Assembly (NCBI RefSeq): GCF_021869535.1
Contig: NW_026262668.1
Coordinates: 55,366,001 to 55,430,000 of the forward strand
Direction: 5' to 3'
Origin: Mytilus californianus
Taxonomy: Eukaryota
DNA length: 64,000 nucleotides
Below the pieces are notes generated by a model. It ran no database searches, was not told where the DNA came from, and worked only from the letters and a program-made list of their open reading frames with translations. Position numbers and translations under genes: made by a program. Positions 4,379 to 58,130 of the stretch are shown here, piece after piece. Numbering within the stretch: the first letter of the stretch is position 1; each line of letters starts with the position of its first letter.

Positions 4379-4379
4379 C

Positions 4380-33980: not shown

Positions 33981-34048
33981 TAAGTGAATATCGACATCAA
34001 AAGTCATCTTCAAAGTTTAAGAATGACCTTTTCATTACTATTCACTTA
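33981..34048 (-). promoter_or_regulatory. SECIS element of deiodinase copy 1
   Basis: Minus strand reads TAAGTGAATA-gta-ATGA-AAAGGTCATTCTT-AAA-CTTTG-AAGATGACTTT-TGAT-gtcga-TATTCACTTA: 10-bp helix I, GA quartet, helix II, apical AAA. Confidence 0.88.
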
Positions 34049-34694
34049 GGTGTAACTTTTCCTTCTCTTTGCTCTCGTTTATCACTTTTCTAATTAGTGT
34101 GACGTGATACACATGTTAATTAAACAATTCATATATTAGTAGAACATGTTATACTTTAAACAAACACTATTCTAAATGATTTCTTTTTCAGTAAAGAGTG
34201 TATATAAAAATTATGGAAATATGAAAATAGGTCAATTTGATTACTTTTGAGATACTGAAGAAACTTAACTTCTAGATGGGAAAATGGTGTCTCTTGGTCA
34301 TTTTTGTGTAATACAACGGAAGAAATAAATGATAAAATATACCAAAAATGTACTTAAAATAACAAAAATTAGAAAAAAAGTGTATTTCAAACGTATGCTT
34401 TTAATAAATAGTTATATATGAAGGTGTTCAAGTAAAACTTCCCAACGCATTGTTTAAAGTAAAACATAAAGTTTTCAAAATAATAATGAAAAATTGAAAA
34501 TATGAGCATCGACTGTCCTTTGTTTGTTGGGCACACATCATTGATTTCTTTGAATAAAATTTAAGATAATTAGCAGTTTTATAATCTTTATGATTTCAAT
34601 TTCAGTATACTAAATAGTTATTACCGTAAAAGTCTAAAACTAGCTAGTAGGATTAAACGTCAACATATCAAATTTAATTTTCACACGTCGATAA

Positions 34695-35494
34695 CTACAA
34701 TGTTTTCCTGTGCATCTGTAACCACACAATGACGCTTTCTGGGTCGTAATTGTGAGAACCGAACTTGTTCGCATAGCTAACTTTCCCATCTTGAATAATG
34801 TAGTAACGTTCTGGAAAGGCACTGTATGCTATATATAAATGCATGTTTTATCGTCCATTGTATCGACTAGCAATGGACAGTGTATGTCTTCCTTTCGAAG
34901 CAATGACGCTGCAGCAATTCGGTCATCTAAAGATCTGTGTTGTGGTATATGATCGTACGTTGTGCCTTGTATGCTCCAATCGTCTGCTGCATGTGATTCG
35001 GATACATAAACAATGACAAAATCAGCTATGCCGGCAAAATCACGCATCATTTCCTTAAAAAGATGCAACTTTGCCATAAACGGTGGTCAAGAGCAGCTTC
35101 CAAAACTAATAACCAAAGGACGATCATTTATTTGGAAGTCTAATAATTTCCGGAATGTCTTAGTATCAACATCATATACTGTTGAATTTTTGGCTTCTTT
35201 TCCGAGCTCCGATTCTTTATGCATAACATCACAATAAAACCACGAACACTGTTTTACAGCTGACAGATTAACATTTGAAATAATTTCGCGACCGATATGT
35301 TTTTTTGCTGCTCTGGCCTGTAAGTATTCCATTAATTTGCATACAAACGGTATTTTTTGTAATATCATAATTACCGTTAAAAATATCGCAAACATGATTC
35401 CTTGAAGTAGAATTAAACATTTTTGAAGAAATTGCAGTATTTGTAGTGTCATATTTATTGGAACTGTCACACTTGTCTGCAAAAAATTAAACAT
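34695..35494 (-). pseudogene. DIO: Iodothyronine deiodinase-like selenoprotein, copy 1 (frameshifted)
   Basis: FGSCS-TGA(35087-35089)-PPF in frame; YVSESHAADDW; DTMDDKTC. An 8-nt TATATATA insertion at ~34830-34838 shifts the frame before AYSAFPERYYII...WLQMHRKTL*. Confidence 0.88.
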
Positions 35495-38400
35495 ATCTTT
35501 TATCAATGAAGTTTCCTTTGGATCAAATTAAAACAGTTTTTCGTAAATAAAAAAAAAGTTCTCATGGTTGAGAAATTATTTTTCCTTACATGCAGACTCA
35601 CCAACTATTTTGATTATTTCCTGGAAAGTAGAAGGTATAATGTAACTTTTTGAGCTGCTAAGTTCAAATAAGCATAAAGTTTCATAAATATATCAAAATG
35701 CCATATCATATTAAATCATAGCATACCTCCTTATTTCAATAATAGCTATAAACCAACATATGTTCTGAAATAAACCAACATATTTACTAAAATAATGTTT
35801 CTGGTTTTGCCTATTCCAATCGACATCGCGGTAAATTTCTAACTTTGTTGATGTATTCATAATAGAAAATATCCTTTTGACAAATTTGCGACGATTTCTA
35901 TTTGCGTTATTATAATATAATTAAAATATCATTTTGAGATCGCCTCGTAATTTTAATTGTCTATTCAGAGTCCGACACTTATTGAAAATCTATAGTGTTA
36001 ATGATCAACTGTTCTAGATAAAACCGTTAACGATTATTACAACTTTAAGAATTACTGTTTTTATGGTTTTTGTCCTGGGATGTCACAATTTCTATATGTC
36101 AATGAATATTTTAACCTTGGGTGTGCATGATCAATGTAACAATAAACAATGTAAACTTATATTAATAGACTTCCGTCTTTGTTTAGTATCTTTCAATGTG
36201 CGATGATAGGGGACAAGCTTCCTCATGTAAATTATCTTATCCTCATATACTTGAAGTCTAATAAAACTAACCATAAATCTATTGATTCTTCACTGTATCT
36301 ATGTTTTCTGTAAATTTGACGAGTCATCATTGAAGTGGGGATCTCAAACGTTATAATTAATTTGACATTTTCAAAAGCTTATAATATTATTTAAGTTTGT
36401 GAATTTAAGAGAGAGGCGAAGATACCAAAGGGACATTTAAGTTTGTGAGTATTTATACTGTTGTATATCTTTTTAGAATGTACGGATTTTACATAAAAAA
36501 TATTGTTAAAAACTTTTTTCTATAATTCAAAAAACAGTACATTTCATTTTCGCATGCTTTTTACGCATAATAGAATATAGTAACATTTCCTCTTTACATA
36601 CCCATTTGAGTACATCTAACACTTACCTGATAGAAATATTTAAAATGCACAATATACTAACTTAAAATTCAGAAGACCATGACTAAAATCTAGGCTTGCA
36701 TTTATCAAATAAAATGTCCAATAAATTAAATCTTTAAAAAAAGTCTTGACTCATCAGATCGATACGAAGCACAAAAAACATAATAGGCAAAAGACACAAA
36801 GCACCGCTCGAAAAGTCCTCGAAGTAACTGAAAGCTTGTTTAAATCCAATAACAAGTAATAAATAAATCATGTATACATTGTTTAAATGTTTATTTGTTT
36901 CAATTTGGCATGTTTTTGAACTGAAATGTACTTGCAGTAGGGCATTGATACTGGTTCCAATACCATTATAAAAACAACATAACCATATAACACGGCTTAA
37001 GAAACTACAAAAAAAACCGGCTTTAATATCATTTAGCCTTTTGGAGAAAGAACATTAGTTTCAGTGCCATAGATGAAAGGGTTATTTCCAAAGAATTGGT
37101 TTCATACCTGGAACGCTTTCATAAAAATATTTCAAATCTGCTGAAATGTTCAGTATCACAGCTTAACATTTTTTATATCATTTTGAAGTATTTCTGGCAA
37201 AATTTTAATAGATTTATATTAATCTAAACAACTATATATTAAGGCGACAGTAGTTAACCGATGTTCAAATCTCGTAAATCGACAAATCAAGGGGAGCAAA
37301 TAGAAAATGGGTGAATCGTCTTAACTCCGAAAAGTCGCTGCTCCTTTTTCCTCATATGAATGCATCATCCGCCGTGCGAATAAAAATGTCACAATCAGGA
37401 ATAGGACACAATCGATAAAATTGCAAATCAGACGACTTTACTCAGTGGGAAATCTAGTGACAAAATATTACCTCTCCTGTAAACAATGAAAACTTGATCT
37501 TTTCATGTTTGTTCCGTTTTAGCAAGGACGCTATTAATTATAAATTAACTAGAAAACGCTCTGGTAAATAGTAACAATAAAAATGAATAGAAATGAAAAT
37601 AAAATTTCCATATAATGTTATCAATTCCCTCCTAAATGGTAAACGACGAGTACAGCAGTCTATCGGATCTTTGTGTAAAATTTGTTTAAGATGATTCAAT
37701 GCAAATTAATTCCTTGAGTACCAAGTTCAATTTATTAACCTACTGGCTGTATACCTCTCTGGAACATGCCAATTATCCGTTTATTTATACAGCTAGATCA
37801 GAGAAGTTCAGGGAAAAAATTTCAATGGAATCGATTGATATACAGCAAAGATAAGCACTTTTGAAATTAAGTTACTAAGCGAATTCAAACGGACCTTATC
37901 CCGATGTAAACATAGAAGTGAATAGATCGAGAAGACCGCAAATACATGCACATAAATTGAGATGACCTTTTCTTAAAATTGTATAAAACATTAGTAAAAT
38001 CTTTTAACGTATAACCTACTTTATGAAAATATTCATCGTTAATTTTTAAACCTGCACATACACGACTTTGAAATTGTCACATTCACGAAAAGACAATATT
38101 TTAATTTTGAAAGTTCACGTGACAAGAGCTCAAAAATTTAAGATGTGAAAAAATGTATATTTTGGGTAATTGTAACATGCTAAGGACTATGTGAAACACT
38201 CCGAAAATTGGTGACCTGACAGATCTTTTTATGTTCATGATTTTTCCATTGTTTTTACTGATGCAATCATAGGACGCTTAGCTATGGTAACGGCATGCAT
38301 GATGTTACAAATCTTTACTCTGATTAGACGAAATTGCGGAATTGAACAAAATCCAACAAAAAAAGATATATGCTACAATATAAAAATATTGGTGTTAAAC

Positions 38401-41400
38401 TTTACGGACTTAAAATCAAACTTAAAAATAAAATTATCCAGATAAATAAAATAAATTCAGGTAAAAAAGGTGTCATTATCACCACTGTCATTTTTTTTTT
38501 CATTTTGTAGGTTTACCCTTTAATACATGAGCAGGTAAATATCACTGACAGGTTCATTAGATCTATAATTGAAGCTAATGTTGGTCAATTGGGCTATTAA
38601 TAGCTCGAGTGCTGTAAATAAATCTTATCGACTTTGTGTACTTGCAACTGCAGTCTAAAACTTCCAGGGCGAAATAATAATCTCAAAGAGTACAAAATAT
38701 TATACTTGAAATAAAGAATGTCAAAATACATACATTGTATGTCGCAAATTTAATTACTTGTCAAAATCTGTTTTATATAGATCACCTCCCTTTGGCGTTC
38801 GTCCGTCATCGATATACACGCCGAAATAGGTTTTATCGCTGACTGTTTACACACATCATTATAACAGTGGTTGCAAAGCTACTTGTCAATTTCAACTTTA
38901 TTTTGAATTAGGATTACACAATCGCTATTATGTAGTAACCCCTTTTGTTGTTTACACAACATTGTCATTCATTTATGACAATGTCATTCGATGTGTTTGA
39001 GCATCACCGCTCTTCAACACTTTGTACAGTGGACCATTCATTGGATACCAATGACCGTTTGTCCCGCCTTCTTTGATTGATTGACAACCGTATTTTGAAC
39101 TTCATCTCGGGACAACTTAAAATGAAAATATTTTTAAAATAAGTTTATCAAATTGAAAATAATTTTCATTAGAAATAAACTACTTTTTCCATTCCATTTC
39201 AAAACAAGCAATGAATTTGTGAAGACATTTAGTCTAACATTTTGTTTTTTAAAAAATGCATCCCTTTTCGAAAAAAGGACATAAAAATAGGTGCATAAGA
39301 AAGAAAATTCCAGTAAAAGTACCGATGTTTCAAATACTAATCAACTGTGAAAGATATTAGGAGTCGTAAAATTTATGAGATCCATTGATTTCATTTAAAC
39401 ATCAAAACAGAGGAGTGATCAGGAGTTGTATGAATGTAAGATTACATTGTACTTGCTTGAAAATATTGTGTATAAACGGAAAGTTTTCTTTTGCATAAAC
39501 GTCAGTAAAAACGTGCCTCTCTTTGTCGATTGAAACTAATACATTTTCGCTACGTGCGTGAATATACATTTATAAAAGAGGCAATGCATTTCACACACTA
39601 GTCTTAAATGTCAATCTTTACTAAAAACTAACAATGTCTTTTATGAACAAAAATGTGATAGATAAAACAAATATTATTTTCGCCGGATATTCTTCGATGC
39701 AAAAAAATGCGGAAAATTTCTCCTGTATTTTTTTTAACTTGCAAGATAAATATCTAAAAGTTGCAAAATCCTACTGGAAAGTGATTATCAAACAGTCTTT
39801 ATCATTTTCTTAAATATTGTTTCCCAATCTAAATTATTATCTGTCGCTGATAAAGGCATATTTTGTTACAAAACTGCGAATTTTACATGTTTTTGTAAAA
39901 TTTTGCTTCGCTTACCAAATTTAATTGATTTGAATCCAAAAGACATTATACATTATAAACCTTCTTTTTCATGGTGAATTGGTAATAATTATGTACTTTT
40001 GAACTTATTCTTTGAATAAAGAAAGTCTGTGGTGTAATTTATAACGCACAGAAATATGTGACTCGCAGGTCAAACAGATGTTGGGATGTAGGAATTAAGT
40101 TTTTTTTCGCAAAAATTGTTTGATTTAAAAAAAATATTGGAAGAGAGAAATACATTAACATTAAATTGCAAGACATTTTTTTTACAATCCCTAGAGGGAA
40201 ATGTTTCGATTTCAAATAATTAGCTGCACATGGTATAAGAATTTTATGTAACTGTTTGCTGTATAAAGTTTAAAGCTTTTCAGAAAGCTTATGGAATTTT
40301 AATCAATCATTTTATGATTTGGTATAAGTACAATATAAACTAAGGAGAGGTGGTATGATTGCCAATGAGACAACTTCCCACCAGGGACCAAACGACGTAG
40401 ATGTTATAGCAACTATGTAGGTCATCGTACGGCCTTCACCAATAAGCAAAACCCATACCGCATAGCAAGCCATAAAAGGCCCAGACATAACAAAATGTAA
40501 AGCATTCCAAACGAGAAAACAAAAGCCTGAATGTATAAAACAACAAACGAATAACAAATATGATACACTGCAACGAACAACCACTAAATTACAATCTCCT
40601 GACTTGGGACAGGCACATGAATAATGAGGCGGGGCTAACATGTTAGCGGGCGCCCAAATGTAGAATGATGAGGTCACATGTTGAAGAAATTAGAATTAAC
40701 CTTTGAGAACAACAAAAAAACAGATAAAAGAAACAGTGCAAACCAAATATGAAATATTGACAATGACAAATATAACAAGGAAAGTTAACAATCAATCAAA
40801 ATTAGGATGAATATTTTCATTTGCCTATGCATGATAAAGAGGTGTATACCTTCATAGTGATGATATATTTCCAGTTCAGCATCTTAGTATCAAGTAGACT
40901 TTTGAAGATTCCGACTTTCCAAAACTAGTTTTTGTATGGTAAAACAATTTGCAATACAAATCAATTTTTTAAACAGAATAATTACATTAGCCAATTCTTT
41001 CATTTGTGTATTTTCTACATAAATTTATTATTGATATCACAAAAAAACATATATTGAAATTGCTCTTAAAGAAAATACAAAATCTAAAATTGTATTTCAA
41101 GTTATCCCCAATGCCTCCTGATCTCTGACCACCAAAAAAAAATTGTCTTTTATCAATAAAAGTTCTAAAACATCACTATTTGCTATGCACAATTCTGATT
41201 GCACAATTTTCTATTTTCTATTTTCGTAATAAAATTATTTTGATGTACACATGTATTTCACGGGCTTTAACAATTATCACTTTTTCAGTAAATATTTTAA
41301 GCTCCTTTTCTGTTCCAAATTACAGAGTATGCTTCCTCTATGTGCAATAATTTTGCTGACAATAGTTGTATGGCAAGCAACTGAACTGTAAATTACTGCA

Positions 41401-42886
41401 AGGTTGAATTATCGGAAAACAGCGAATTATGATTTTTCACAAAAGATGAAATTATTTTCACAACCACTGCCGAAATTACTCTTGCAAGTGTTGGACATGT
41501 CGATTCATAAACATTGACTCTTTTCCAACAGTAACTAACAGGTCAATCTCTCCAGTCCAGTGGTGGTTTGTGCAATAAAGGAAAAACAATATCTTCTTCA
41601 CCCTAAAAAAAATAATTTTAATTTCTCACAAAATGTATCATTAAAATCTCTAAAACAAAGAAAATTCTAAATAATGCGAAATGTTTTGAATATGGAACGG
41701 AACCAAATATTGTATCTATCAATTTGCATATTTTATTCAATTTGGTGGAGGTTTTCTGCACTCGGTAGATGGACATTTTATTGTCTATTTTATTTCGGTG
41801 CTGTTCCAAATCATTAAAATATGACGACCCCGGGATGAAAATTATCACCCAATAAAAGAACAGAACACTGCAAAGTATATGTTTTTTTACAATTAGTTTG
41901 CCACGTTTTTACGATACTTTTATTGATTCTAAATTTCTTGAAAAAGAATAATTATTTTCAGGGTGGGGGAAAGGGGGTTTGGGGTTGGGGTAGTGAAATT
42001 TGTTTTTATAAAACAATAAGTATACATAATTGAGTTTGAATCAAGTTGAAATGACAGCAATAATTCTACATAGATAATATTTTTATTCAAATGATACATA
42101 CCTCGAACCCTTAAATCGTCATTTTTCTGTAGACCCTACATTGCTTTAAGTCAGTGCGACTTTATCCGCCAACAACACATGTCCACAAACAAAACTTCGG
42201 GTACATGAGGAGACCTTCTTGCTTTAAGACGGTTCACATTTTCTTTATTATGAGCTAGAGCTAGTTTCGACCTTGACGTCTTATTTTTAAAAATACTTCA
42301 TTGATGATCTTATCACTACAACGTACTTGCAAAAACTTCGTTCCCGTGAAAATTAAGAGTTGTTTCAATTTCAAATTTCATCAAGATCTCTACTGTGGCT
42401 ATAAGCAAACTGTCTGTCGACAAGATAAGAGGTCAATGTATCCAAGTGAATTTATTCTAATGTACAATGGGTAAATGTCTGGTTAAAACTAATCTTATCT
42501 TTGATGTGTCGCATAAGCATCCCTATAAAGTAAGACAGTCCGTGCGTGACCCATGGCATAAAATATTATATGCATTTCATTGGCTATTTTCTATCAAAAT
42601 CCAGACCAGTTAGTAACCTATATCAATTTACGTATCTGAAGACGAATTTGTGTAAAATATTTTGTTTGATTTTAATTTCTGAAAATCTAAATAAACATAA
42701 CTCTAGAACAGATCTTTTTGGGACGTCGGGTTGTGCCTTTATTTTTGCGGGAATTCGGGATTTACACTTATTGGGACTCGGGAATCAATGATTAATTTTT
42801 CGGGATTCGGGAAAAAATGTTTTATTTTTCGGGGTTTCGGTATTCAGCTTTTATTTTTTTCAGAAAATTCGGGATGACACCCCTCC

Positions 42887-42890
<4 letters not shown>

Positions 42891-42941
<51 letters not shown>
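42891..42941. repeat. (CT)n microsatellite
   Basis: Pure dinucleotide run of about 25 units. Confidence 0.97.
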
Positions 42942-42943
<2 letters not shown>

Positions 42944-44067: not shown

Positions 44068-44130
44068 ACATCATATTTCATCCAAAGTCAAATCTTATGC
44101 TTTGAATATGACTTCTTCATTGTGTGATGT
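44068..44130 (-). promoter_or_regulatory. SECIS element of deiodinase copy 2
   Basis: ACATCA-caca-ATGA-AGAAGTCATATTC-AAA-GCATAAGATTTGACTTT-GGAT-gaaata-TGATGT; AATAAA at 44052-44057. Confidence 0.88.
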
Positions 44131-44526: not shown

Positions 44527-45267
44527 TTACATTGTTTTCTGATATACTTCTAGCCAACCCTTTACGTCTTGTGGACTATAACATTGTGGACCGAGTCCGT
44601 TTGCTAAGACTATCTTTCCGTTATGGATGATGTAATATCGTTCGGGAAACGCACCATATGCAAGACATGTTTTATCATCCATGGTATCTACCAGTATCGG
44701 ACAGTCAATACCTTCTTGTCTAAGAAGTTTAGCAGCTTCAATTCTTTCCTCTAATGATTTATGCTGTAACATATCTTCATATTTAGGACCACGGATATTC
44801 CATCCATCTAAAGGGTGTGCTTCTCTTACATAAATTAATACAAAGTCAGCAACAGAAGCAAACTCACGGATCATTTCCTTGAAACGTTCCAGGTCTGCCA
44901 TAAAAGGAGGTCAGGTGCAGCTTCCAAAATTAATAATTAGTGGGCGATGGGATTTTTCAAAGTCTAATAATTTACTAAATGATTTAGATTCTATATTATA
45001 TACTGTCGTGTTAACTGCTGATTTTCCAATTTCTGCTTCTTTATATATAATTTCCCATAAATGTTTCTGCAAAACTTGTTTCAAAGTTTTTATGTTGATG
45101 ATTGGATTTAATTCCGGTCCGTTAGTTTGTTTTGATTTCCACGCCATTCGTCGTTTCACAAGGATTCCAATGCCAGGCAGACTCCGAAGAGTCGTTACAA
45201 ATGTTATAAAAAAGACAGCCTTGAAACATTTGACAAGAACAGTCAGGTTATAAATATACCGAGACAT
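44527..45267 (-). CDS. DIO: Iodothyronine deiodinase-like selenoprotein, copy 2 (246 aa, Sec at TGA 44911-44913)
   Basis: Hydrophobic N-terminus; FGSCT-U-PPF, YVREAHPLDGW, VDTMDD, AYGAFPERYYII; single coding exon of 741 nt. An alternative in-frame ATG lies at 45300. Confidence 0.95.
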
Positions 45268-47518
45268 CATAGTTTGTTTTCTCAAAGAACTGTAATTCAT
45301 CAATGTATCTACAATTTAAATCAAAGACATCTTATAGCGGGAAATGGAAACTTCCAAGAAAAAAACATAATACGTTTCTACTTGAGCCCAATGGTTGCTT
45401 AAATTAATATAAACGGAGATATAAAAAATACTGATTAACACTAGGTTTGTTGTCATTTTCTTTTTTTTTAATTGTTTCACATTTTGTTATGTCGGGGCCT
45501 TTTATAGCTTCCTGTGTGATATGGGTTTTCCTCATTGTTGATGGCCATACAGTGACCTGTAGTTTTTACATCTTTGTCATTTGGACTCTGGTTGATAGTT
45601 GTCTAATTGACAATCATATCAAATCTCCTTATTGTATATTGCTCGGTTTAAAACAAAAGATATTCTAACTGCACTCTAAAATACAAGCACAACTTGGTTA
45701 ATATAGGAATGACACCTTTTCTGAAATAGGTAATGGACGTCTACAATAGTCACCAATTTTGTTCAGGAAAAAAATACCAGGGTAGATATTGTCTGTATTT
45801 TACCTCATATTTTAAGTTTAACAGTTTTAGTATATCAATTTTTAAGATATTTTAGAAACGTCTCTTAAAAGATATCGTAAAATATAGAATATCAAATATT
45901 AAGAGACACAAGATGTTAGACTATGGCTATTCTTTTGGTAACTCCCTATATGTATTGACACATTTTTTTTCGGTTGTTGGCGTTCTTGGCAAATGTTTCA
46001 TCCAAAAATGCACTTCAAACGCAGGAAATTCGGAATGTTATGTAAATGATATAGCTAGCAATTCATATTTCATTAGATATTGACAATCAATTTTTCAAAC
46101 TAGAAAACTTCTAGATTTTCATTCTAAAAGTGCTACTGGTTTATTAAATCAAATATAGGTTACATCAATTATTCATTGTTAATAGATATAAGAAGATGTG
46201 GTGTGAGTGCCAATGAGACAACTCTCCATCCAAGACACAATTTGTAAAAATAAACCATTATAGGTCAAAGTACGGTCTTCAACACGGAGCCTTGGCTCAC
46301 ACCGAACAGCAAGCTATAAAGGGCTCCAAAATGACTAGTGTAAAACCATTCAAACGGGAAAACCAACGGTCTAATCTATATAAAAAACGAGAAACGAGAA
46401 ACACTTATGAACCACATCAACAAACGACAACTACTGAACATCAGATTCCTGACTTAGGACAGGTGCATACAATTGCAGCGGGTTTAAACGTTTTAATAGG
46501 TACCAACCTTCACCCTTATCTGAAACAATAGTGTAACATCACAACATAGAAAGACACACTATAAAATATCAATTGAAATGGCTTAACTCAATCAAAAGAC
46601 ATAGTAACACAAGTGAACATACACTGAACGAATAAATTTGATCTATGATACAATGTAAATACAAAATCAATAAAATAAGGGGTGAATAAATAAAGGCAAC
46701 AGTAGTATACCGCTGTGAGATGTTAAACAATTTCAAAAAAACAACAACAACCTTGACCAAAAAGCCGCCAAATGCAATAATATACTCCGGTAAATGAAAA
46801 TAATTTTGTTGTAAGGTATACAGTTTAAATGGAGAACGGAAATATTTTTTACAAAATAAAATAATTTTGTTGTTCATAGTACGAAGAAGTGAAAAAATAT
46901 AGTCATACCAAACACTTATCAAAGCTGGTATATAGACGAGATATAACCCTGAATAAGTAAACATTAAATAACAAAAAAGCATTACAAATAGTATCAAATT
47001 AACAAGAAAGTATGATTTGAGAGTACTCGCAGTTACTGACAGCTAGTTAAAAGCCAAAATCAATTAATAATAAAAAATCATGCATCAGAGACTAAGTCTT
47101 TCTTTTTGTACCAATTAAATCGACCGAAATAATAGAAAAACGTACAAGAAAAAATAGCAGGTTCGATCCCTTTTCATATATAGGTAAAAATCAAAAGAAC
47201 TAACACGGTTATTATGTAAAAAAGTTATTACTTGGCAGTATATCACTTTATTAACAAAAATTAAACGGATAATAGGTTAGTTGTTTTATAATTTAAAAAA
47301 AGTTAGCATGTATTAGATACATCCATGAGAATGTTACCCGATTGGATTCATCTTATTTAAACCAAGATAGTATGACTATTGCAGAATGATATATTTCAAG
47401 AATTAAGGAGGAAAAGGGGGTCTTTCAGCAATTTGACCCTACGTATTGTAAAGCATGGTAAATCAGGATATCCAATTACATTTAAGGACATATTGGTGTA
47501 AATATAAAAACAACTTAC

Positions 47519-48216: not shown

Positions 48217-48657
48217 CAGCTACTTTTGCATAGGTACTATTTCTGTACTAAAAATCTGTAGTACTGGAAATTTACTTTTAATATTTAGTACTATTTCTTT
48301 ACTTTATTATCATTGTAATATTTAGGTACCTGTATTTTACAGTACTTGATTTGTACTAAAAAATTTGGTACAGAAATAATACTAACAGTGATCGCAATAT
48401 TTCATGTTTGAAAATCATAACTTTAAGAGATTTGAAATAGACAAACTTTCAAAATGCTGAAAATGTAACGGTGTAACCAAAAATCTGTAGTACTTAAATT
48501 TCAAGTACAAATCAAGTACTGTAAAATACAGGTACCTAAATATTACAATAATTTTAAAGTAACAAAATAGTACTGAATATTAAAAGTAGATTTCCAGTAC
48601 TACAGATTTTTGGTAAAAAAATAGTACCTATGCAAAAGGGTTGCGCAAAAGTAGCTG
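48217..48657. mobile_element. Tc1/mariner-type MITE with long internal inverted arms
   Basis: TA|CAGCTACTTTTGC ... GCAAAAGTAGCTG; inner arms of ~120 bp are AGTAC-rich. Confidence 0.7.
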
Positions 48658-49199
48658 TGTATAAGAACCGAAACAGGTGAAGAGCTATATGACCTAAAAC
48701 TAACAGCCAAATCCATCTACAGTCAACTTTGCCGGAGGGAGTTGGAACCATAGTTTCTTAATAATTTCTAAATTTGTAAAGGACAATTTAAGAAAAGTAT
48801 GTTATAAATCATGTCAGTACTGACCACTCAACTGATTATACTCTCTGGGACTAATAGTCCAAGAGCAGCGGTATCGACTCAGTGCTATAAAAAAAAATAA
48901 CAATCTATAAAGGAGTAAGTTCACGATGGTCAATATTGGCCCTATGATTCTGCGAAATTTAAATTCAGTAATAATAGTAAACATCTGATGACGCAATATG
49001 TAAAAAATATCTGACATATACAAAATCAACAAGTGTTAGACGCATTAGAACACTTATGATGTTATTATGACGTCATAATTGTGCATTCGTATGAAGAAAA
49101 TCATATTTTTATCACTACATTTTTTGCTAAATTTAATAGTTTTTGCTTAAGCGATGTTGGCCACATACAAGGACCACTATGATTTTTTTGTTAGGATGT

Positions 49200-49900
49200 A
49201 TATTTGATTCATATACATCTTTGTAAACTTGTCCCCTATACTCTTTGTCTTATACTTAGACGACCTAGAACACTTTTGTGGGGGAAAAGGCCTACGAAGG
49301 CTTCAAAGTATTTCTAAAAAAATTTACTTCAAGCTTCAAATTTATCTAAAACTGAATATAATCCTTTATGCAGACGACACATCCCTATTGGGAGAAAGTG
49401 TTGATGATTTACAGAAGCAGTTGGATTCTTTCAATGAAAACTGTTATGTTTTGAAGTTTTAAGTTAATGATATGAAAACTAAAGTCATGATTGTCTCTAG
49501 AGGCAGAATGTCGTCAAATTTACATTTTAATATAGATGACACTGATATTGGAAATGTAACAGAATTTAGCTATTTGCGCATATTCTTATCTAGAACTGGT
49601 AATCCTAAAATAGCACAGAAGCAACTCGCAGAAAAGGCTACACAAGCTATGTGTAATCTGTTGAAATCGGGCCGCATGCATAATCTTTCCATTTAGTGTA
49701 ATTTCGATCTTTTCGACTAAAAAAAGTTGTTAAACTCATACTACTGTATGAATGTGAAATAATGGGCATGGTAATGTTGATTTTGTAGAAAGAATCCATC
49801 TGTAATTTTGTATACTTCTTTTGCCTTGGAAACTGAAAAAAATCATATCTAGCTATATGAGATATGAGGAACTTAGTAGATATCCTTTTCACGGGACATT
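49200..49900 (+). mobile_element. Decayed LINE RT fragment (CR1/L2/RTE-like)
   Basis: SPILFVLYLDDL, ILYADDT, KTKVMIVSRG, EFSYL. Confidence 0.82.
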
Positions 49901-49943
49901 GACATTAAAATTAAATATAGCATCTTATTGGTGTATATTATAA

Positions 49944-50150
49944 TGGCACCTACCAGTATCGGAGTCAATATATTCTTGTCTAATGTAAAGAAGTTGCAAA
50001 TGTTCAAGATGATAGGAAAACACCAACTTGCCACAACATTATCAGTGATTCAGTGAACTTAATGTCAAAAAATCAACGTATGTTTAATCTGTATAAATAT
50101 AACCACTAACAGGTAACAAGGTGGGATGTCTCAAAAGTACTTAAATGGCG
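49944..50150 (-). pseudogene. Deleted relic of a fourth deiodinase copy
   Basis: 49944-49983 aligns to the copy-2 CDS (CTACCAGTATCGGA..GTCAATA..TTCTTGTCTAA). 50025-50150 aligns to the exon-1 block, with the donor changed to GCAAGT. Confidence 0.6.
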
Positions 50151-51009
50151 TTATGTGTGTTTGATATTTGAACATATGAGGTTCAATATTCAGTACAACA
50201 AAGTTCAATTTTCGGGGCTAAAATTTTGTTCGGGTTTCAACATAGCCAAATACTTTAATTGAATTCTTTTTTATTTTTACTCATTTTTTACTTTAATTAA
50301 TAATATTCTTAATCGTGACCAATTCATCGATCATAGGCTTCGAGTTTGTCTTGTGTGAATACTTGATAGACTCGCATATTTTCCTTGACACGCAAATTTT
50401 AGCTTTTTGATACTTATTTACATAAAATTTTACCGATAACATTAAGTCAAAAAAGAAATCAAAGATAAAGATACGAAAGGAAAACAAAAACATTTAAGGT
50501 AAACGGAGTAATGACCATGTATCCATTTGAAGATATTTCTGTAGTAATAATTTATTTATAATTACTTCTTTCATGTTCCCTTTGCATCGAACTTGTTCCA
50601 AATTAAATGTTTATCAAACTCATTTGGATCCTGTTTGCTATTTTACATACTGTATTTAACAGCTATGTCTTGTTTTAAGATGATACTGGCTATGATAGCT
50701 TCCTCGGTAGCCTATGCATATCTTTAATTCCCTGCATATGTGTTCCATGTAGTTTGTACATATTCAGATGACACCAATAGTAGTTAGATAAGAGACTAAA
50801 ATTATGCCAATTACATTATCAGTACCAATTTTACTGTATGAAATCCGCATTACGACCATCGATGTCTTTTCGGAGATGTTCAAGGCCAAAATGTGTTGAA
50901 AGTCCAAACCTTTATACAAACGTTGAAGTTGGGGTGTAACTGTTGGCGTTAGTTTCCATTGTCGTACAGACACAGGTATGAGGGAGTGGACAGGGGGGGT
51001 ACCCTTCTC

Positions 51010-51062
51010 CCACCTCCCGCCCCCTATCTCCCACCTCCCGCCCCCTATCTCCCACCTCCCAC
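51010..51062. repeat. 21-bp tandem repeat (CTCCCACCTCCCGCCCCCTAT), ~2.5 copies
   Basis: Directly visible; explains ORF 50764-51105. Confidence 0.85.
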
Positions 51063-51424
51063 TTTTAGAATCTTTTTTTCTCTCCCACCTATTTTTTGTC
51101 AGCAATGAAAGCCAGGGTTTCAGAGTTACTGTAAAATTATCTACTTAAAAGGGGTGCAAATTATATTTGGATACATAAAAAATATCTGTTAAGAATATCT
51201 AAGTCTTTTTCCTTATGCAAAAGTATAAACAGCATTTGACTTCCTACCCTTTACACTAGTATTCGAAAGAATAGTTCAATAACAGTTCGAAAGAATTAGA
51301 CCTACCCTGTTTCATAAAAAGAGTGGACACTGTTGATTTAAATACTAGTATCTTGTTTTAGAAAGGGACGAATCATACTTTGAAAAAAAAATTTTTTTTA
51401 AATTCTTTGATACTAACATCATCA

Positions 51425-52230
51425 GAATGCTTGACTTGTTTATTTACAAAATAGTTGTTCCGTTCAACAAACAATCGGCATTCCTATGGAAACCAACTGT
51501 GCTCGTCTTCTTGTCGACTTGTTCTTTAATTCATATGAGGCAGACTTCATACAAGAGCTTCTCAGAAAGAATGAGAAGAAGCTAATTACATTACCATGTA
51601 ACTTAACTTTCCGCTATGTAATTGATGTCCTCTCACTAAATAATTCAAAGTTTGGTGACTGTTGAGCGCATCTATTCCAACAAGGTTGAAATAAAGGATA
51701 CAACAGATACAGTTAAGGTTGCCTCATATCTTGACTTACATCTAGACATTGACAATGAGGGTCGGTTGAGAACAAAAGCTTACGACAAAAGAGATGAATT
51801 AAGCTTTTCAATTGTGAATTTACCATGTCTATGTAGCAACATTCCTGTAGCACCTGCATAGGGAGTATATCTCCCAGTTGATGCTTTATTCCAGGGCATG
51901 ATTTTGCTATTATGATTTCGTTAATAGAGTGTTGCTGCTTACAAGGACGCTATTAAACCAATGGTTCTAATTGGTAGAGTTAAGGTAATCCCTTTCAAAG
52001 TTTTACGTACGCCATGAGTTGGTTGACAGTTATTGAATATGTGTCACAGATGACCACAGATATGTTCAAATTGTCGTAGCAACAATACTGTCCTATTTTC
52101 CTCGATTTTGTTATCGGCTTTTTACCGAATGCGTACTTACCATAAGCAACATGACGGGTGCCACATGTGCAGCAGGATCTGATTCCCATTCTGGAGATCA
52201 CATTTAGTTTTATGACGGGGTTCGTGTTCC
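51425..52230 (+). mobile_element. Decayed Penelope-like RT fragment
   Basis: QQTIGIPMETNCA, FRYVIDVLSLNN, ASYLDLHL, YDKRD, SNIPVAPA. Confidence 0.8.
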
Positions 52231-53214
52231 TCAAACTTTAGTTATGACGTAGACGATTATCTTTCTATCGTCTGTTCGTTATTGTAATATTGTTGTCGGT
52301 TTCTCTTCAACTTATTAGTTTTCATTGTCCCTGTGATATCTTCCGTCTCATTTTTGTCTATTTCAATTCCTATCATTTTATATATAATTGTTTTCTTGTT
52401 ATCATTAAAAAAAATAGAACTGTCCGCATAACGGGACTAATTCACATTATATCTACATTTTAGTTGTTGCACAATAGCAGATTGAAACTCGGTATCAAGA
52501 CAATGTTATTTCGAGATTTTTGTTTTTCAGCATGCTCATTTTATACATGCATTACGTTTGTGTGAGATTGACACATGGTATATAACTTGTAAGTCATCTG
52601 ATACAATTATACTATCAGACTCAGGAACAAAGTCTGAGGTTTGTATAATGTAAATTCAGAAATTAAGGCTTGTTTTATTATTGCAAATCTCTGACGACTG
52701 TCCAAAATGTGAGTTTTGATTAATGCGATTCAAGTCAATTAAAAAAAAAGAAAAAGAAAAAATTCAAAATGTGAGTTTTTCGAAATCAGACATAATAAAA
52801 AGTAACGATGTTTGGTGTTGACACCTTTTGACCCACTATATCTAGGAAAGGGTGTCAAATCCTTTACATAATTCTGAAAGCACGTGCAAAGCCAAATCCA
52901 ATGAAAAAAATCCCATCAAAATAAGATGAAAAATAAAAAAATCTATATGTTCTGGAAAAGTACGGTTTTTTGGCCCCTCTTTCTACAAAAGCTGAATTCT
53001 ATTGTCATGTCCTTTTTGTACACATCAAAACAACTATATTAATGAAAAGGTTTGTCGAAATCGAACTTACAATAAAGAAGTAACAGTGTTGGGTGTTGGT
53101 CCCGTTTGACCCCTTATATCTCGGAACCTGTAAAAGCTACATCAAATCCACATACCAAGTTTATTCGAAATAAGTTTTATCGTACCATTATGGCATAGTT
53201 ACGTCCCTGACACC

Positions 53215-53640
53215 AATCAGACAATGTTTCCTGTCACAGTGGGACAAAGGTCAAAGTAGCGGTCACAGTGACCTGACTTTGGTGTTGTACACACCCACTT
53301 CCCATGATGCATCCATATACCAAGTCTAGTCAACCTAAGATCTAAAACAGTTAAGCCCCGGACACGGTTTACAATCATAGGGGTCAAAGTCCAGGTCACA
53401 ATGACCTGGACTTTTGGTATGTGGCACACTTCCATCCCATGATGCATCTTCATACCACGTTTGGTAAACCTAGAAGTTCTACGGTACAAGTTATGCCCCG
53501 GACACGGTTTTACTAAAATAGGGGTCAAAGGTCAAGTTCAGAGTGACCTGACTTTGGTATATGACACACACCCAGTCCATCATTTATCTACATTCCAAGT
53601 TTTGTCAACCTAAGATTTACGATACAAAAGTTATGCGCCT
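53215..53640. repeat. ~140-bp-period degenerate tandem repeat (GTGACCTGACTTTGG)
   Basis: Motif at ~53268, ~53401 and ~53543. Confidence 0.65.
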
Positions 53641-53723
53641 GACACGAACTTTTAACAAACCAAATCGATGCAATTAGCTATTTAATACACTTTGAATCTT
53701 GATATGTAAAATTTTATTCAGAA

Positions 53724-53790
53724 ACATCTTATTTCATCCAAAGTCATTTCTTCTCCTTTCCTTTGAATATGACTCCTTCATTTACGATGT
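53724..53790 (-). promoter_or_regulatory. SECIS element of deiodinase copy 3
   Basis: ACATC-gtaa-ATGA-AGGAGTCATATTC-AAA-GGAAAGGAGAAGAAATGACTTT-GGAT-gaaataa-GATGT; AATAAA at 53713-53718. Confidence 0.85.
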
Positions 53791-54033
53791 CATTCTTTAA
53801 AATAAAACGTACAAAAAAGACACACATAAACAACTATGTGTTTTAAGAAAAAAATTCACAAATAAACGTTACCTTATTTAAATTATCTCGTATACTTATT
53901 TTCTTATTATTCTAAGACCAAAATGTTCTTCAGAAAATAATATCTAACAATCATTTTTTTGTTAATTTGCTAATATGCTAATGTTGAATGTTGGCCTCAA
54001 ACCTGAAGCTCAAGACTTTTAATTTTTTACATT

Positions 54034-54774
54034 TTACATTGTTTTCTGGTATACTTCTAACCAACCCTTTACGTCTTGAGGACTATAACATTGTGGACCG
54101 AGTCCGTTTGCTAAGACTACCTTTCTGTTATGGATGATGTAATATCGTTCGGGGAACGCACCATATGCCAAACATGTTTTATTATCCATGGTATCTACCA
54201 GTATCGGGCAGTCAATGCCTTCTTTACTGAGAAGTTTTGCCGCTTCAATTCTTTCCTCTAATGATTTATGCTGTAACATGTCTTCATATTTAGGACCACG
54301 GACGTTCCAGCCATCTAAAGGGTGTGCTTCTCTTACATAAATTAATACAAAGTCAGCAACAGAAGCAAACTCACGGATCATTTCCTTGAAACGTTCCAGG
54401 TCTGCTATAAAAGGAGGTCAGGTGCAGCTTCCGAAATTAATAATTAGCGGGCGTTGGGATTTTTCAAAGTCTAGAAGTTTGCTAAATGTCTTCGATTCTA
54501 CATTACATACTGTTGTATTAATTGCTGCTTTTCCAACTTCTGCTTCTTTGTATATAATTTCCCACAAATGTTTCTGGACTACTGTTTGAAAAGTTTTTAT
54601 GTTTGTGATTATTTGTAACTCTTGTCCGTACAATTGCTTTGATTGCACTGCCATTCGTCGATTCACAATTGTTCCTATACCAGGCAGCCATCGAAGAATC
54701 ATTACAAGTGTCCAAAAACTTACAATCTTGACAAAACTGACCAGAACAGTTAATTTATAAATGCACCCAGACAT
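54034..54774 (-). CDS. DIO: Iodothyronine deiodinase-like selenoprotein, copy 3 (246 aa, Sec at TGA 54418-54420)
   Basis: FGSCT-U-PPF, YVREAHPLDGW, VDTMDN, AYGAFPERYYII; colinear with copy 2, 741 nt. Confidence 0.95.
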
Positions 54775-55845
54775 TTTAGCTTATACTGGAATTCACCAAT
54801 GTATCTACAAATAAAATGATATGTTAAACTCAGCGCGAAATGAAATTCGAAGAAACAAAATAATTATATTTTAACTCGAGTCCAAAGACTTTTGGAATAG
54901 ATATTTATTTAGATGGAAAATTAGAACACAAAGAGATTAATGGCATTTTTGTTTTTTATACTGACTTTTTCAGCAAGAATATAAAGCAAGTCCGCTATCT
55001 TCTGCAGACTTGAAAAGAAAAGAAATGCAAATCAAAATCTAGCCGAGTTATTTAAAATTTTCTGAAACATTAAATGTTTATAATTATATTTTTTATAAAT
55101 CTAGGTCCAGCGATGTCGGCTTAAAACTTGTCTAGATGCATCGGTTTGTCTGTTCTCAAAGTATATAGTGTGGTGTAAACACAGCCATACTTTGTCAATT
55201 CCTTTTGATGAATCTAATCCATAATTTTACTTCAAATGCAGGAAACTCTGAATGTTCAAGTCTATATAAGATGTATCCAGCAAAGTATATATTAATAGAT
55301 ACTGGCGATCATACAGGTATACAGAACTTATTGATTTTGCTATTGCTCTGTGTCTTTTTTCGGGAATTTTTATAGACTGAAGTATACAAATAACTAAGTG
55401 TATGCAAAAAAATATCTATCTGACTCCAATTTCTTTTATAATTAAGAGGGGGGCAAGGGGGGTTCCAATAACAGCAAAACAGTTAATTGATTTGGCTTAA
55501 AACAGATTACAAGGAATTGAAAAGGGACAAAAACAGATAACAGTTAATGAAATATTAAAATCAGTCCGGTCCAGGACCAATCCAATAGATCTTATTATAT
55601 AACTGGTTGTATGGACCTATACCTATGCCTTAACAGAGACATATACATACATTTTAATTATGATCCTCATCATGTATCCTGGCCATATGTTTTTCTTTTT
55701 GTTATACATGTATTAATAATTGAATAGATTTGAATTTAATATGTACACATGCGGATACAAGGAACATTATCCCCATATATATGTAAAATTCAAATTCGAA
55801 CAATTCTTAATATCAAGAAAAAAGGAAAACATATGACTAGGGATA

Positions 55846-56324
55846 CAGTGGAGATCACTTCTAACCTCTCATTAGAACTGTCAGAATAATCTGTCATAGA
55901 ACTGTTCTAAACTGTTCTAGAACAGTTCTACCTATAACAGTTCTACCCTAGAACTATTCTAAGTAGAACTGTCAGGATCAGTTCTAGGGTAGAACTGTCT
56001 AAAACTGTTCTAGGTAGAACTGCCCAAATCAGTTCTAGTCGTAGAACTGACCAAAGATTTGGTCAGTTCTAGGTAAAACTGTCTAAAACTGTTCTAGGGT
56101 AGAACTGTCTAAAACTGTTCTAGGGTAGAACTGTCAGGATCAGTTCTAGGTAGAACTGTCTAAATCAGTTCTAGGTAGAACTGACCAAATCAGTTCTAGG
56201 TTAGAATTGTTCTAGCTAGAACTGTCTAAAAGGTGTCAGGATGACAGTTCTACATACTGTCCTAGAACAGTTCTCCTGGCAGATTCTGACAGATTTGATG
56301 AGACGTTAGAGGTGATCTCCACTA
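55846..56324. mobile_element. Tc1/mariner-type MITE filled with AGAACTG/CAGTTCT repeats
   Basis: TA|CAGTGGAGATCACTTCTAAC ... GTTAGAGGTGATCTCCACTA|TA. Confidence 0.82.
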
Positions 56325-56389
56325 TACCTGAAGAGGATAGGCCTAGGTCCATACGACCTTAACTGAAACATCTTTTATACATGTTGTGT

Positions 56390-57650
56390 ACAAGTCATCA
56401 TTTTGTACAAATTATGATTTGTACAAATTATAATTTGTATTTTGACTTTGTACGAATTGTAATTTGTACAAAAAGTGCATGTACAAATTACAATTTGTAC
56501 AAATTTCGACTTAAATTCCCTTAAAACTTGTACAATAATTTATAGTATGGATGTTGAATTTTTCTGAACAAAATTACTAGCTTCTGTTTTTGTTAAAGTA
56601 ATATTTTAAAATCAAGGGCATTTGATAGATCAATTTTTGTGGTTTGGTTTTTTTTCTTTCTTAATTTTCCGAGAAAATGAAGCCAGTGACGCCTTATATT
56701 AATTTTGATTTTTAGAACGTTTTTTTTTTCTTCTGATAAGCAATTTATAGTATGGATTTTGTTAAAAACATTGATGACCACATAATAAACTTTAGTTATA
56801 AAATACAAAAATACCCAGATGGAGACAGGAAATGTAATTGATACATGCATGCCAGCTACATGTACACTTAATTCTGATAATATAACAGAAATTGGCCCGA
56901 GTGATAATCTGGATGACACCAAGTAAAACAATATTGCATCTTATGTGAAATTATTGACTATGGAGAATTTGGGTACCGCATCGGAACAGCTGTTGAATTT
57001 ATAAAAGGACATTTTTCGAGAAATTAAATTGAAGCTGTTAGAGACACATCTTTATTTGCAACAACGATTTCTGAGCTTCAACTTGCGCTATGTGAAGCAG
57101 TCAAAAAGCCAATGAGACAACACTCCAAAAGAGACCAAATGACAAAGAAATTAACACCTATAGGCCAACATACAGCCTTCAACAATGAGCAAACCCAAAC
57201 GGCATAGTCAGCTATAAAGGCCCTGGAATGACAAATGTAAAACAATTCAAACGAGAAAACTAACGGCCTAATTTATCTACAAAATTAATGAACTAAAAAA
57301 AATATGTAACACAGCAACAAACGACAACCACTGAATTACAGGCTCCTGACTTGGGAAAGGTACATACAGAGTGTGGTGAGGTTAAACATGTTAATTGGCG
57401 CCCAACCCTCCCCTTTCCTGAAGGGACAGTGGTTTAACTGTACAACACAAGGTTTATTATTTGGTCATTGAATGAAAATTTTATAGTTTGTACCAATGCT
57501 TTTTTATAACAAAAGCAATGCTATAAGTTATTGTACAAGTTATAAGTGAATTTTAGTCACTTTTTGTACAAATTACAACTTGTACAAAAAATGTGTACAA
57601 AGTCAAAATACAAATTATAATTTGTACACATTTTTTTTGTGCAAAATGTC
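56390..57650. mobile_element. Foldback-like element with TTGTACAA-rich inverted ends and a nested SINE-like repeat
   Basis: AATTATAATTTGTATTTTGACTTTGTAC versus GTACAAAGTCAAAATACAAATTATAATT; nested repeat at 57100-57445. Confidence 0.6.
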
Positions 57651-58000
57651 ATCTAAACACATGTTCACAGACAATGGAATTACAAAGGATAATAATATAT
57701 TATATAAACCCCAATAGATATAAGAAGATGTGGTATGAGTCTCAATGTTCAATTATCTTCAAATTCTACCGAAGATTGGCTTTCAAAATGCTAACATTCC
57801 AATTTTCAATAACAGTTAACAAAGAATTAAATTGCCCCATAACAGCATAACAGTTAAACCCCTTGTCCCCCTCCAATTAACATAAACAAACGAATGCATC
57901 AATGTTTAATTGTAAGTATTCAGCAGTCAAAATAAATTTCAAAATTGTTCTATTATTTTAACAAAAGCAAAATTCAAGGTAATAGATAAAACCAACTTAC

Positions 58001-58130
58001 CACTACATTATCAATGATGTTAATGTCAAATCAGTGAATTTTAAAACTGAACAGTGTTTGTTTTAATCTGTGTATATCAAACAGGTAAAAGGTGGGACGT
58101 CTCTCCAGCATTTACGTGGATTTTGGTGTG
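58001..58130 (-). promoter_or_regulatory. Putative non-coding first exon of deiodinase copy 3
   Basis: Ends at GTAGTG|GTAAGT (GT at 57999-58000); acceptor TTTGTAG|ATACATTG at 54804. A TTTAAATA TATA-like motif lies at ~58152-58159. Confidence 0.6.

What the first reader, a model, noticed from the sequence alone, without database searches (positions are those of the whole stretch)
33981..58130. Tandem cluster of deiodinase-like selenoprotein genes hidden by UGA recoding
Three same-strand genes about 10 kb apart each have an in-frame TGA in SC(T/S)-U-PPF and a single coding exon; standard ORF calling splits every one. Vertebrate DIO1-3 are unlinked single-copy genes, so a local expansion in a mollusc without a thyroid gland suggests a diversified dehalogenation system, for example for dietary or algal iodo/bromo-aromatics or metamorphosis signalling. 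The function is inference.
Basis: partly seen in the sequence, partly recalled or inferred. Interest (0 to 1): 0.8.

Follow-up and report, generated by a model that had tools for sequence, protein, structure and literature searches.

The report
Three tandem mussel deiodinase selenoprotein genes
Three neighbouring mussel genes encode deiodinase-type enzymes that read UGA as selenocysteine; two are intact and one carries an 8-base frameshift, and this is a genuine but ordinary example of a gene cluster already described in other invertebrates.

Summary
Three minus-strand genes lie 9.8 and 9.5 kb apart. Each matches Pfam T4_deiodinase on both sides of an in-frame TGA inside FGSC(S/T)-U-PPF. Each has a canonical SECIS hairpin 250-800 nt after its stop codon.

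- **Copies B and C:** uninterrupted single-exon reading frames of about 246 codons. They are 83.5% identical in DNA (dS 0.32, dN/dS 0.32) and their flanks are unrelated, so they are true paralogues and not haplotype duplicates.
- **Copy A:** older (68% identical to B) and broken here by an 8-nt insertion, giving a frameshift and a premature TAG. Contigs of two other DNA samples carry the same insertion. One low-depth contig from an RNA library lacks it.
- **Phylogeny:** the three copies fall in a bivalve clade beside two scallop deiodinases, apart from the Dio3-like mollusc deiodinases.

What is already known limits the novelty. Sec-containing deiodinase cDNAs with SECIS have been cloned from a mussel (McDx and McDy, PMC8481496). 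Tandem deiodinase clusters were reported in 2012 for Lottia, amphioxus and Trichoplax (PMC3473315).

Verdict: a new member of a known kind, of modest interest.

The parts
34829..35494 (-). Copy A, reading frame from the first ATG (35494; an alternative ATG is at 35452) through the Sec codon TGA (35087-35089) to the premature TAG at 34829-34831
   Evidence: Translation. Pfam PF00837: E 2.9e-11 for the N-terminal piece and 1.2e-22 for the piece after the TGA. Matches PDB 4tr3 Dio3 at E 1.2e-14.
34831..34838 (-). 8-nt insertion in copy A relative to B and C, causing a frameshift
   Evidence: MAFFT alignment of A, B and C. The insertion is present in DNA contigs of runs X3 and X4. It is left out in one RNA-library contig of X19, at depth 2.5 (table 4).
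34695..34829 (-). Copy A, C-terminal 44 codons (AYSAFPERYY...KTL) plus stop, still open in the shifted frame
   Evidence: Three-frame translation. Matches Dio3 chain positions 140-180, directly following the match of the preceding piece.
33981..34048 (-). SECIS element of copy A (ATGA at 34035-34032)
   Evidence: The fold gives helix I, an internal loop, the AUGA/GA core, helix II and AAA in the apical region: -20.7 kcal/mol, z -3.84. Descriptor hit. No Rfam SECIS_1 hit.
44527..45270 (-). Copy B coding sequence. ATG at 45270 or 45267; TGA (Sec) at 44911-44913; stop at 44527-44529
   Evidence: Translation. Pfam: E 2e-12 and 1.6e-37. PDB 4tr3 at E 4.9e-28. The start codon was chosen from the B/C upstream alignment.
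44069..44130 (-). SECIS element of copy B (ATGA at 44120-44117)
   Evidence: It lies in the only block of the 3'UTR that is conserved between B and C. Rfam SECIS_1 gives 16.1 bits, below the gathering score of 35, but at exactly this position.
54034..54774 (-). Copy C coding sequence. ATG at 54774; TGA (Sec) at 54418-54420; stop at 54034-54036
   Evidence: Translation. Pfam: E 5.8e-13 and 2e-36. An independent public contig, L007, is 96.9% identical over 54794-53871 and continuous across the TGA.
53720..53796 (-). SECIS element of copy C (ATGA at 53781-53778)
45271..45391 (-). 5' flank of B that is conserved with the 5' flank of C (54775-54885); probably 5'UTR or core promoter
   Evidence: Self-BLAST homology extends to 45391 and 54885. 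Alignment of the two flanks.

Best explanation
This is a tandem array of three paralogous genes of the iodothyronine-deiodinase family in a mussel genome. Each gene has one coding exon.

**Recoding (inferred from the anatomy and from established SECIS biology).** Each mRNA carries a UGA at the catalytic position and a SECIS hairpin in its 3'UTR. The SECIS recruits SBP2 and eEFSec with Sec-tRNA, so the UGA is read as selenocysteine.

**The enzyme (inferred by homology).** The product is a thioredoxin-fold reductive dehalogenase of about 246 residues, anchored by an N-terminal membrane helix. Its selenolate removes a halogen from an iodothyronine-like substrate. It is regenerated through the conserved cysteines.

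**History of the array.** It arose by local duplication of a bivalve deiodinase type whose nearest named relatives in the tree are two scallop deiodinases. The split of A from B/C is old, and the B/C duplication is younger (dS about 0.32).

**State of the copies.** B and C are intact and under purifying selection, strongest in the catalytic half. Copy A was constrained for most of its history, but in this genome an 8-nt insertion disrupts it. It is therefore a very recent pseudogene or a null allele. An in-frame version exists in at least one other sample.
For: **Motif and family**
- The motif is found three times against 0.02 expected.
- Pfam PF00837 matches both sides of each TGA.
- Sequence matches to the solved Dio3 and Dio2 structures reach E 4.9e-28 and 1.9e-23.
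- Residues aligned with Dio3 Tyr197, Glu200, His202, His219, Cys239 and Glu259, and the Cys in the SC(T/S)U motif, are all present.
- The N-terminal hydrophobic segment scores 1.8-2.75 on Kyte-Doolittle.

**SECIS**
- SECIS-shaped hairpins lie 795 nt (A, counted from its premature stop), 410 nt (B) and 256 nt (C) after the stop codon.
- The only conserved block of the B and C 3'UTRs is the SECIS.
- Another species' ortholog (L001, L002) has a SECIS of the same architecture.
- The core AATGAA..GTC..AAA..GAC.TT.GATG is invariant across all four, and one helix II pair changes A-U to G-C.
- A SECIS descriptor scan gave 7 hits against a mean of 1.9 in shuffles; three of the hits sit at the genes.

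**Selection and duplication**
- dN/dS for B-C is 0.32 overall and 0.145 after the Sec codon. For A-B it is about 0.18.
- DNA identity is 83.5% for B-C and 68% for A-B, and the flanks are unrelated.
- The tree gives a clade of A, B, C, L001, L007 and P0011 with support 98/93.

**Copy A**
- Its insertion is present in two independent DNA samples and absent from one RNA-library contig.
Against: - Rfam SECIS_1 does not reach its gathering score: 16.1 against 35 bits for B, and no hit for A.
- No RNA reads of the one raw RNA run of the same species label lay on copy A.
- Expression of B and C was not tested with reads. L007 may be a DNA contig rather than a transcript.
- No protein evidence for Sec insertion is available.
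- The enzyme activity and the substrate are inferred from homology only.
- The in-frame version of A rests on a single contig at depth 2.5.
Confidence: 0.87

Rival explanations
1. The array is a functionally diversified dehalogenation system. On this view the paralogues act on different halogenated substrates, such as dietary or algal bromo- and iodo-aromatics, rather than on thyroid-hormone-like signals.
For: - There are three paralogues, with faster protein change in the N-terminal half (dN/dS 0.41 for B-C).
- The position of Dio3 Arg275 is Leu in B and C and Phe in A.
- Recalled from the Dio3 structure paper, not checked here: Arg275 forms part of the substrate clamp.
Against: - The same position is also non-basic in the vertebrate DIO1-type sequences and in the sister scallop sequences, so it is not special to this array.
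- The catalytic half of B and C is 94% identical, with dN/dS 0.145. The differences lie in the anchor and linker, not around the active site.
- One copy is broken.
- In a mussel, knock-down of the two cloned deiodinases blocks larval metamorphosis (cited in PMC9957406). That points to signalling.
Confidence: 0.1
2. The UGA codons are ordinary stops. On this view the genes are truncated or dead deiodinase relics, and the SECIS-like hairpins are chance AT-rich folds.
For: - Rfam SECIS_1 stays below its threshold.
- The loose descriptor also hits four other places in the window.
- Copy A is indeed broken.
Against: - 126 codons after the UGA stay open in B and C and evolve at dN/dS 0.145.
- That half carries the conserved EAHxxDGW, QH(K/R)SLE and CP(I/L)LVDTMD blocks.
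- The SECIS is the only conserved island of the 3'UTR and recurs in another species.
- Mussel deiodinase cDNAs with a UGA and a grade-A SECIS are published (PMC8481496).
Confidence: 0.03
3. Copy A is not a pseudogene. On this view the 8-nt insertion is a segregating null allele, or is specific to this species, and an in-frame functional allele is common in the population or in a sibling species.
For: - An X19 RNA-library contig covering 34741-34932 lacks the 8 nt.
- A second X19 contig spans A's TGA.
- After the frameshift the frame is still open for 44 codons to a stop at the position homologous to that of B and C.
- A's SECIS is the best-folding of the three.
- dN/dS for A-B is about 0.18.
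Against: - The assembly and the contigs of two other DNA samples of the same species label all carry the insertion.
- The X19 contig has depth 2.5 and differs from the window by about 3%, so it may come from a sibling species.
- The raw RNA run of the same species label showed no reads on A.
Confidence: 0.4

Closest known systems
Mytilus coruscus deiodinases McDx (258 aa) and McDy (242 aa), cloned cDNAs (PMC8481496)
   Same: Mussel deiodinase selenoproteins with one in-frame TGA in the catalytic centre and a SECIS in the 3'UTR. Their sizes are similar to those here. In that paper McDx groups with a scallop deiodinase outside the three vertebrate types, as this array does with two other scallop sequences.
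   Different: Only two cDNAs were described, with no genomic arrangement given. Here there are three tandem genes, one of them frameshifted. I could not align the published sequences, because they are not in the text, so orthology to McDx is inferred from tree topology alone.
Tandem deiodinase (DI) gene clusters in Lottia gigantea, Branchiostoma floridae and Trichoplax adhaerens (Jiang, Ni and Liu 2012, PMC3473315)
   Same: Local tandem duplication of Sec-deiodinase genes, with three or more genes in some clusters, each with its own SECIS. One of the species is a mollusc. The authors also note that annotation pipelines miss or split such genes.
   Different: Different lineages and independent duplications. 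This array sits in a bivalve-specific clade, all three genes lie on one strand, and one member is freshly disrupted.
Vertebrate DIO3 (solved structures 4TR3 and 4TR4) and DIO2 (9H48)
   Same: The same fold by sequence (E 4.9e-28 and 1.9e-23). The FGSCT-U-PPF motif is identical to that of Dio3. The EAHxxDGW, His219, Cys239 and Glu259 equivalents are conserved. From my own knowledge, DIO3 also has a single coding exon.
   Different: About 45% identity in the catalytic half. The genes here are not orthologous to any one vertebrate type. The Arg275 position is hydrophobic. The vertebrate genes are unlinked single copies (my own knowledge).

Membership tests
Iodothyronine deiodinase family (Pfam PF00837) | Significant match to the family profile over its full length | tested here: met
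   All six pieces score above the 27-bit cut-off. Together they cover profile positions 4-113 and 116-236 of 237.
Iodothyronine deiodinase family (Pfam PF00837) | Catalytic selenocysteine, or cysteine, in the conserved FGS(C/A)T-U-P(P/S)F centre | tested here: met
   FGSCS-TGA-PPF in A and FGSCT-TGA-PPF in B and C. The motif aligns to Dio3 ...NFGSCT up to the Sec position.
Iodothyronine deiodinase family (Pfam PF00837) | Supporting catalytic residues (Dio3 numbering: Tyr197, Glu200, His202, His219, Cys239, Glu259) | tested here: met
   All are present in A, B and C in the alignments to 4tr3 and in the family alignment. Arg275 is not conserved, but it is also absent from the DIO1-type sequences.
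Iodothyronine deiodinase family (Pfam PF00837) | N-terminal membrane anchor | tested here: met
   The best 19-residue Kyte-Doolittle windows score 2.75 (A), 1.78 (B) and 2.16 (C) and lie near the N-terminus. This is hydropathy only, not a topology predictor.
Iodothyronine deiodinase family (Pfam PF00837) | Reductive deiodination of iodothyronines | not testable with these tools
   This needs recombinant enzyme assays.
Eukaryotic selenoprotein gene (UGA recoded through a SECIS) | SECIS in the 3'UTR: AUGA/GA non-Watson-Crick core, helix II, unpaired AA(A), helix I | tested here: met
   All elements are present in A, B and C, with 13 nt between AUGA and AAA in each. The element is conserved in another species' ortholog. 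The descriptor is enriched over shuffles.
Eukaryotic selenoprotein gene (UGA recoded through a SECIS) | Match to the curated Rfam SECIS_1 model at its gathering score | tested here: not met
   16.1 bits against 35 for B, at the right position. No hit for A, and none in the 30-kb scan. The helices here are AT-rich; SECISearch3 was not available.
Eukaryotic selenoprotein gene (UGA recoded through a SECIS) | Coding constraint continues downstream of the UGA | tested here: met
   dN/dS after the Sec codon is 0.145 for B-C and 0.095 for B-L001.
Eukaryotic selenoprotein gene (UGA recoded through a SECIS) | Selenium is actually incorporated | not testable with these tools
   This needs 75Se labelling or mass spectrometry.

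The most novel reading that the evidence does not exclude
The mussel-lineage array may have split its roles: B and C may differ in membrane targeting or timing, and A may be a dispensable third enzyme now being lost. At least one member might then act on a halogenated substrate other than T4 or T3. That would make bivalve deiodinase arrays a diversified dehalogenase toolkit rather than a copy of vertebrate thyroid-hormone control.
Probability: 0.1. Interest if true: 0.6.

Novelty: new member of a known kind. Interest (0 to 1): 0.3.

Why it matters
- **Annotation.** All three genes are split or lost by standard gene calling, and public calls on related contigs show the same split.
- **Gene count in mussels.** The window shows at least three genes of one deiodinase type, not the two cDNAs studied so far. 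This matters for knock-down and expression work on larval metamorphosis, because primers or dsRNA may hit several paralogues at once.
- **Copy A.** The freshly frameshifted copy, with an in-frame version elsewhere, is a small natural experiment on whether a selenoprotein paralogue is dispensable.
- **General principle.** None of this changes the picture: tandem deiodinase clusters in invertebrates and Sec-deiodinases in molluscs are already published.

Tried and rejected
- **Rfam for SECIS.** The 30-kb scan gave nothing. A narrow scan gave 16.1 bits for B and nothing for A. I therefore relied on structure, position and conservation instead.
- **Exact-sequence look-up of B's post-Sec ORF in public assemblies.** Not on record.
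- **Word search with copy A's 84-residue piece.** No candidates, so no ortholog of the A type was recovered. The closest sequences to A in the later profile search are the B/C-type proteins.
- **A second or third copy near the other-species gene.** Only one copy lies within 10 kb either side in L001. Its full contig was not read.
- **Programmed frameshifting or a mini-intron to rescue copy A.** Rejected. Eight nucleotides cannot be an intron, there is no slippery heptamer at the site (read directly from the sequence), and an 8-nt-shorter version exists.
- **Haplotype duplication.** Rejected on divergence and unrelated flanks.
- **Arg275 substitution as a sign of a new substrate.** Rejected as evidence, because DIO1-type and scallop sequences also lack the arginine.
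- **Not run.** The large representative protein search, as the operators advised, because the family assignment was not open. Structure prediction, because the sequence matches to solved structures were already decisive.
Full report
**Observation.** A degenerate DNA pattern for S-C-(S/T)-TGA-P-P-F matches three times in the 64-kb window, all on the minus strand, against 0.02 expected. The TGA codons are at 35087-35089 (copy A), 44911-44913 (B) and 54418-54420 (C), which puts them 9824 and 9507 nt apart. Mechanical ORF listing shows every gene cut in two at the TGA. All six half-ORFs match Pfam PF00837 (T4_deiodinase). The halves before the TGA cover profile positions 4-113 and the halves after it cover 116-236 of 237, so the TGA sits exactly where the profile has the catalytic residue. 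A tblastn of B's two halves against the whole window finds only these three loci.

**Gene structure.** B (45270/45267 to 44527) and C (54774 to 54034) are continuous frames from ATG to stop apart from the TGA. The single coding exon is therefore confirmed for these two. The upstream alignment of B and C shows that the shared start is ATG-TCT. B's further upstream ATG is not conserved in C. About 110 nt of 5' flank are conserved and end in an acceptor-like TTACAG, so an upstream non-coding exon cannot be excluded.

Copy A is different. Relative to B and C it has 8 extra nucleotides around 34831-34838, which shift the frame and create a TAG at 34829-34831. The last 44 codons (AYSAFPERYY...KTL, then stop) remain open in the shifted frame. 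They match Dio3 chain positions 140-180, directly following the match of the preceding piece to positions 59-136.

**SECIS elements.** Each gene has, downstream on the same strand, a hairpin with the full eukaryotic SECIS anatomy: helix I, an internal loop, AUGA, helix II, unpaired AAA 13 nt after AUGA, and a 3' GA. The elements are at 33981-34048 for A, 44069-44130 for B and 53720-53796 for C. In the otherwise unalignable 3'UTRs of B and C, the SECIS is the one conserved block.

A related gene from another species (L001 and L002, 73% DNA identity) has an element of the same architecture 836 nt after its stop. The four-way alignment has an invariant core, AATGAA..GTC..AAA..GAC.TT.GATG, and one helix II pair changes from A-U to G-C. 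My own loose SECIS descriptor gives 7 hits in the window against a mean of 1.9 in dinucleotide shuffles, and three of the hits are these elements.

The curated Rfam SECIS_1 model does not confirm them. It finds nothing in the 30-kb scan, 16.1 bits against a gathering score of 35 for B in a narrow scan (though in exactly the right register), and nothing for A. I treat the SECIS as established by structure, position and conservation, with this caveat stated.

**Real paralogues, not assembly duplicates.** B and C are 83.5% identical over 905 nt. Outside the gene and the SECIS block their flanks share only dispersed repeats. A is 68% identical to B. By Nei-Gojobori, B-C has dS 0.32 and dN/dS 0.32: 0.145 after the Sec codon and 0.41 before it. 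A-B has saturated dS and dN/dS about 0.18 (A was analysed with the 8 nt removed). An independent public contig (L007) is 96.9% identical to C but only 86.4% identical to B, and it runs uninterrupted across the TGA.

**Reads.** Public runs that hold copy A were found and four of them were laid on 33300-36300.
- Contigs of two DNA samples of the same species label (X3, X4) cover the gene at single-copy depth and contain the 8-nt insertion. It is therefore not an assembly error.
- In an RNA library labelled mollusc metagenome (X19), a 184-nt contig covering 34741-34932 leaves the 8 nt out. A second contig spans A's TGA. Both differ from the window by about 3% and have depth near 2.5, so they may come from a sibling species.
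- The raw RNA run of the same species label (X21, 6% sampled) put no reads on A.
- Copy A is thus a very recent pseudogene or a null allele, and an in-frame version exists elsewhere.

**Family placement.** The post-Sec half of B matches the solved Dio3 (4TR3, E 4.9e-28) and Dio2 (9H48, E 1.9e-23) structures. Residues aligned with Dio3 Tyr197, Glu200, His202, His219, Cys239 and Glu259, and the cysteine of the SCT-U motif, are present in all three copies. The Arg275 position is Leu in B and C and Phe in A. It is also Val or Leu in the sister scallop sequences and Thr, Met, Ala or Pro in vertebrate DIO1-type sequences, so nothing follows from it. Each protein has an N-terminal hydrophobic segment.

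A profile search found 1081 relatives. I built a maximum-likelihood tree on the 126 post-Sec columns from 37 chosen rows. The rest of the 120 listed hits were left out, mostly unnamed metagenomic fragments and redundant vertebrate and crustacean rows. The tree puts A, B, C, L001, L007 and one further unnamed sequence in a clade with support 98/93. That clade is sister (98/93) to two scallop 'type I' deiodinases and an unnamed JGI sequence. Other mollusc deiodinases (Pecten, Mizuhopecten_c, Mactra, Littorina, Patella) sit near vertebrate Dio3. B, C and L007 form a clade at 99/92. A's exact position relative to L001 is weakly supported (89/78).

**What is known.** An earlier follow-up note of this scan calls the genome a mussel (I did not test this independently).
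- PMC8481496 cloned two Mytilus coruscus deiodinase cDNAs, McDx (258 aa) and McDy (242 aa). Both have an in-frame TGA and a grade-A SECIS, and McDx groups with a scallop deiodinase outside the vertebrate types.
- Knock-down of both blocks epinephrine-induced metamorphosis (cited in PMC9957406).
- PMC3473315 reported in 2012 that the deiodinase family shows the most gene clusters among invertebrate selenoproteins. It found tandem duplication in amphioxus, Trichoplax and the mollusc Lottia gigantea, with three or more genes in some clusters.
- Reviews list Sec-deiodinases from scallop, oyster, abalone and Aplysia.
- I found no paper describing this particular mussel array.

**Mechanism.**
- *Shown:* the gene anatomy, the family membership by sequence, the conserved catalytic residues, the purifying selection and the SECIS-shaped elements.
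- *Inferred:* UGA is recoded to Sec through the SECIS, SBP2 and eEFSec. The products are membrane-anchored reductive dehalogenases acting on thyroid-hormone-like iodinated compounds. B and C have diverged mostly in the anchor and linker region, which suggests different localisation or regulation rather than different chemistry.
I give it about 0.1.

**Verdict.** It is a new member of a known kind, with one unnoticed twist: a freshly frameshifted copy. Interest 0.3.

Noticed in passing
window 33170-33213 (-), with a related copy of the surrounding repeat at 29518-29592 in the opposite orientation: Type I hammerhead-ribozyme-like motif: Rfam Hammerhead_1 at 28.4 bits, E 0.0036, below the gathering score of 34, with all core boxes present. 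It lies just downstream of copy A's SECIS, inside a short repeat. This fits the hammerhead-bearing Penelope-like elements or retrozymes of bivalves.
   Followed up: no
window 33399-33458, with copies near 40332, 46180 and 47693: A repeat core of about 60 nt with enormous copy number. The summed contig depth is about 1e6 in DNA runs and it is abundant in RNA runs, with many different flanks. It is probably the conserved core of a SINE- or MITE-like family.
   Followed up: partly
window 4000-10300: A GC-richer block (43% against about 31%) holding ORFs for a protein-primed type B DNA polymerase (7828-9543, PF03175), an rve integrase core (4622-5164, just under the cut-off) and a protein with a Rho_N/SAP-like domain (9734-10303). 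This looks like a Polinton/Maverick-type element.
   Followed up: partly
window 12333-16133 (+): An intact 1266-codon LINE ORF with an endonuclease, a reverse transcriptase and a zf-RVT domain.
   Followed up: partly
window 55844-56326: A dense array of units of about 25 nt (GTAGAACTGTC...GTTCTAG) that is its own reverse complement over about 480 nt. It produced spurious microRNA-like Rfam hits.
   Followed up: no
window 62500-63700: A GC-skewed tandem repeat region that gives long repetitive ORFs on both strands.
   Followed up: no
proteins P0036, P0042, P0053, P0095 and others: Many decapod crustacean proteins are annotated as iodothyronine deiodinases and match the profile at E about 1e-37. 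They form a supported clade in the tree. A 2021 review states that none had been reported in arthropods (PMC8143656).
   Followed up: no
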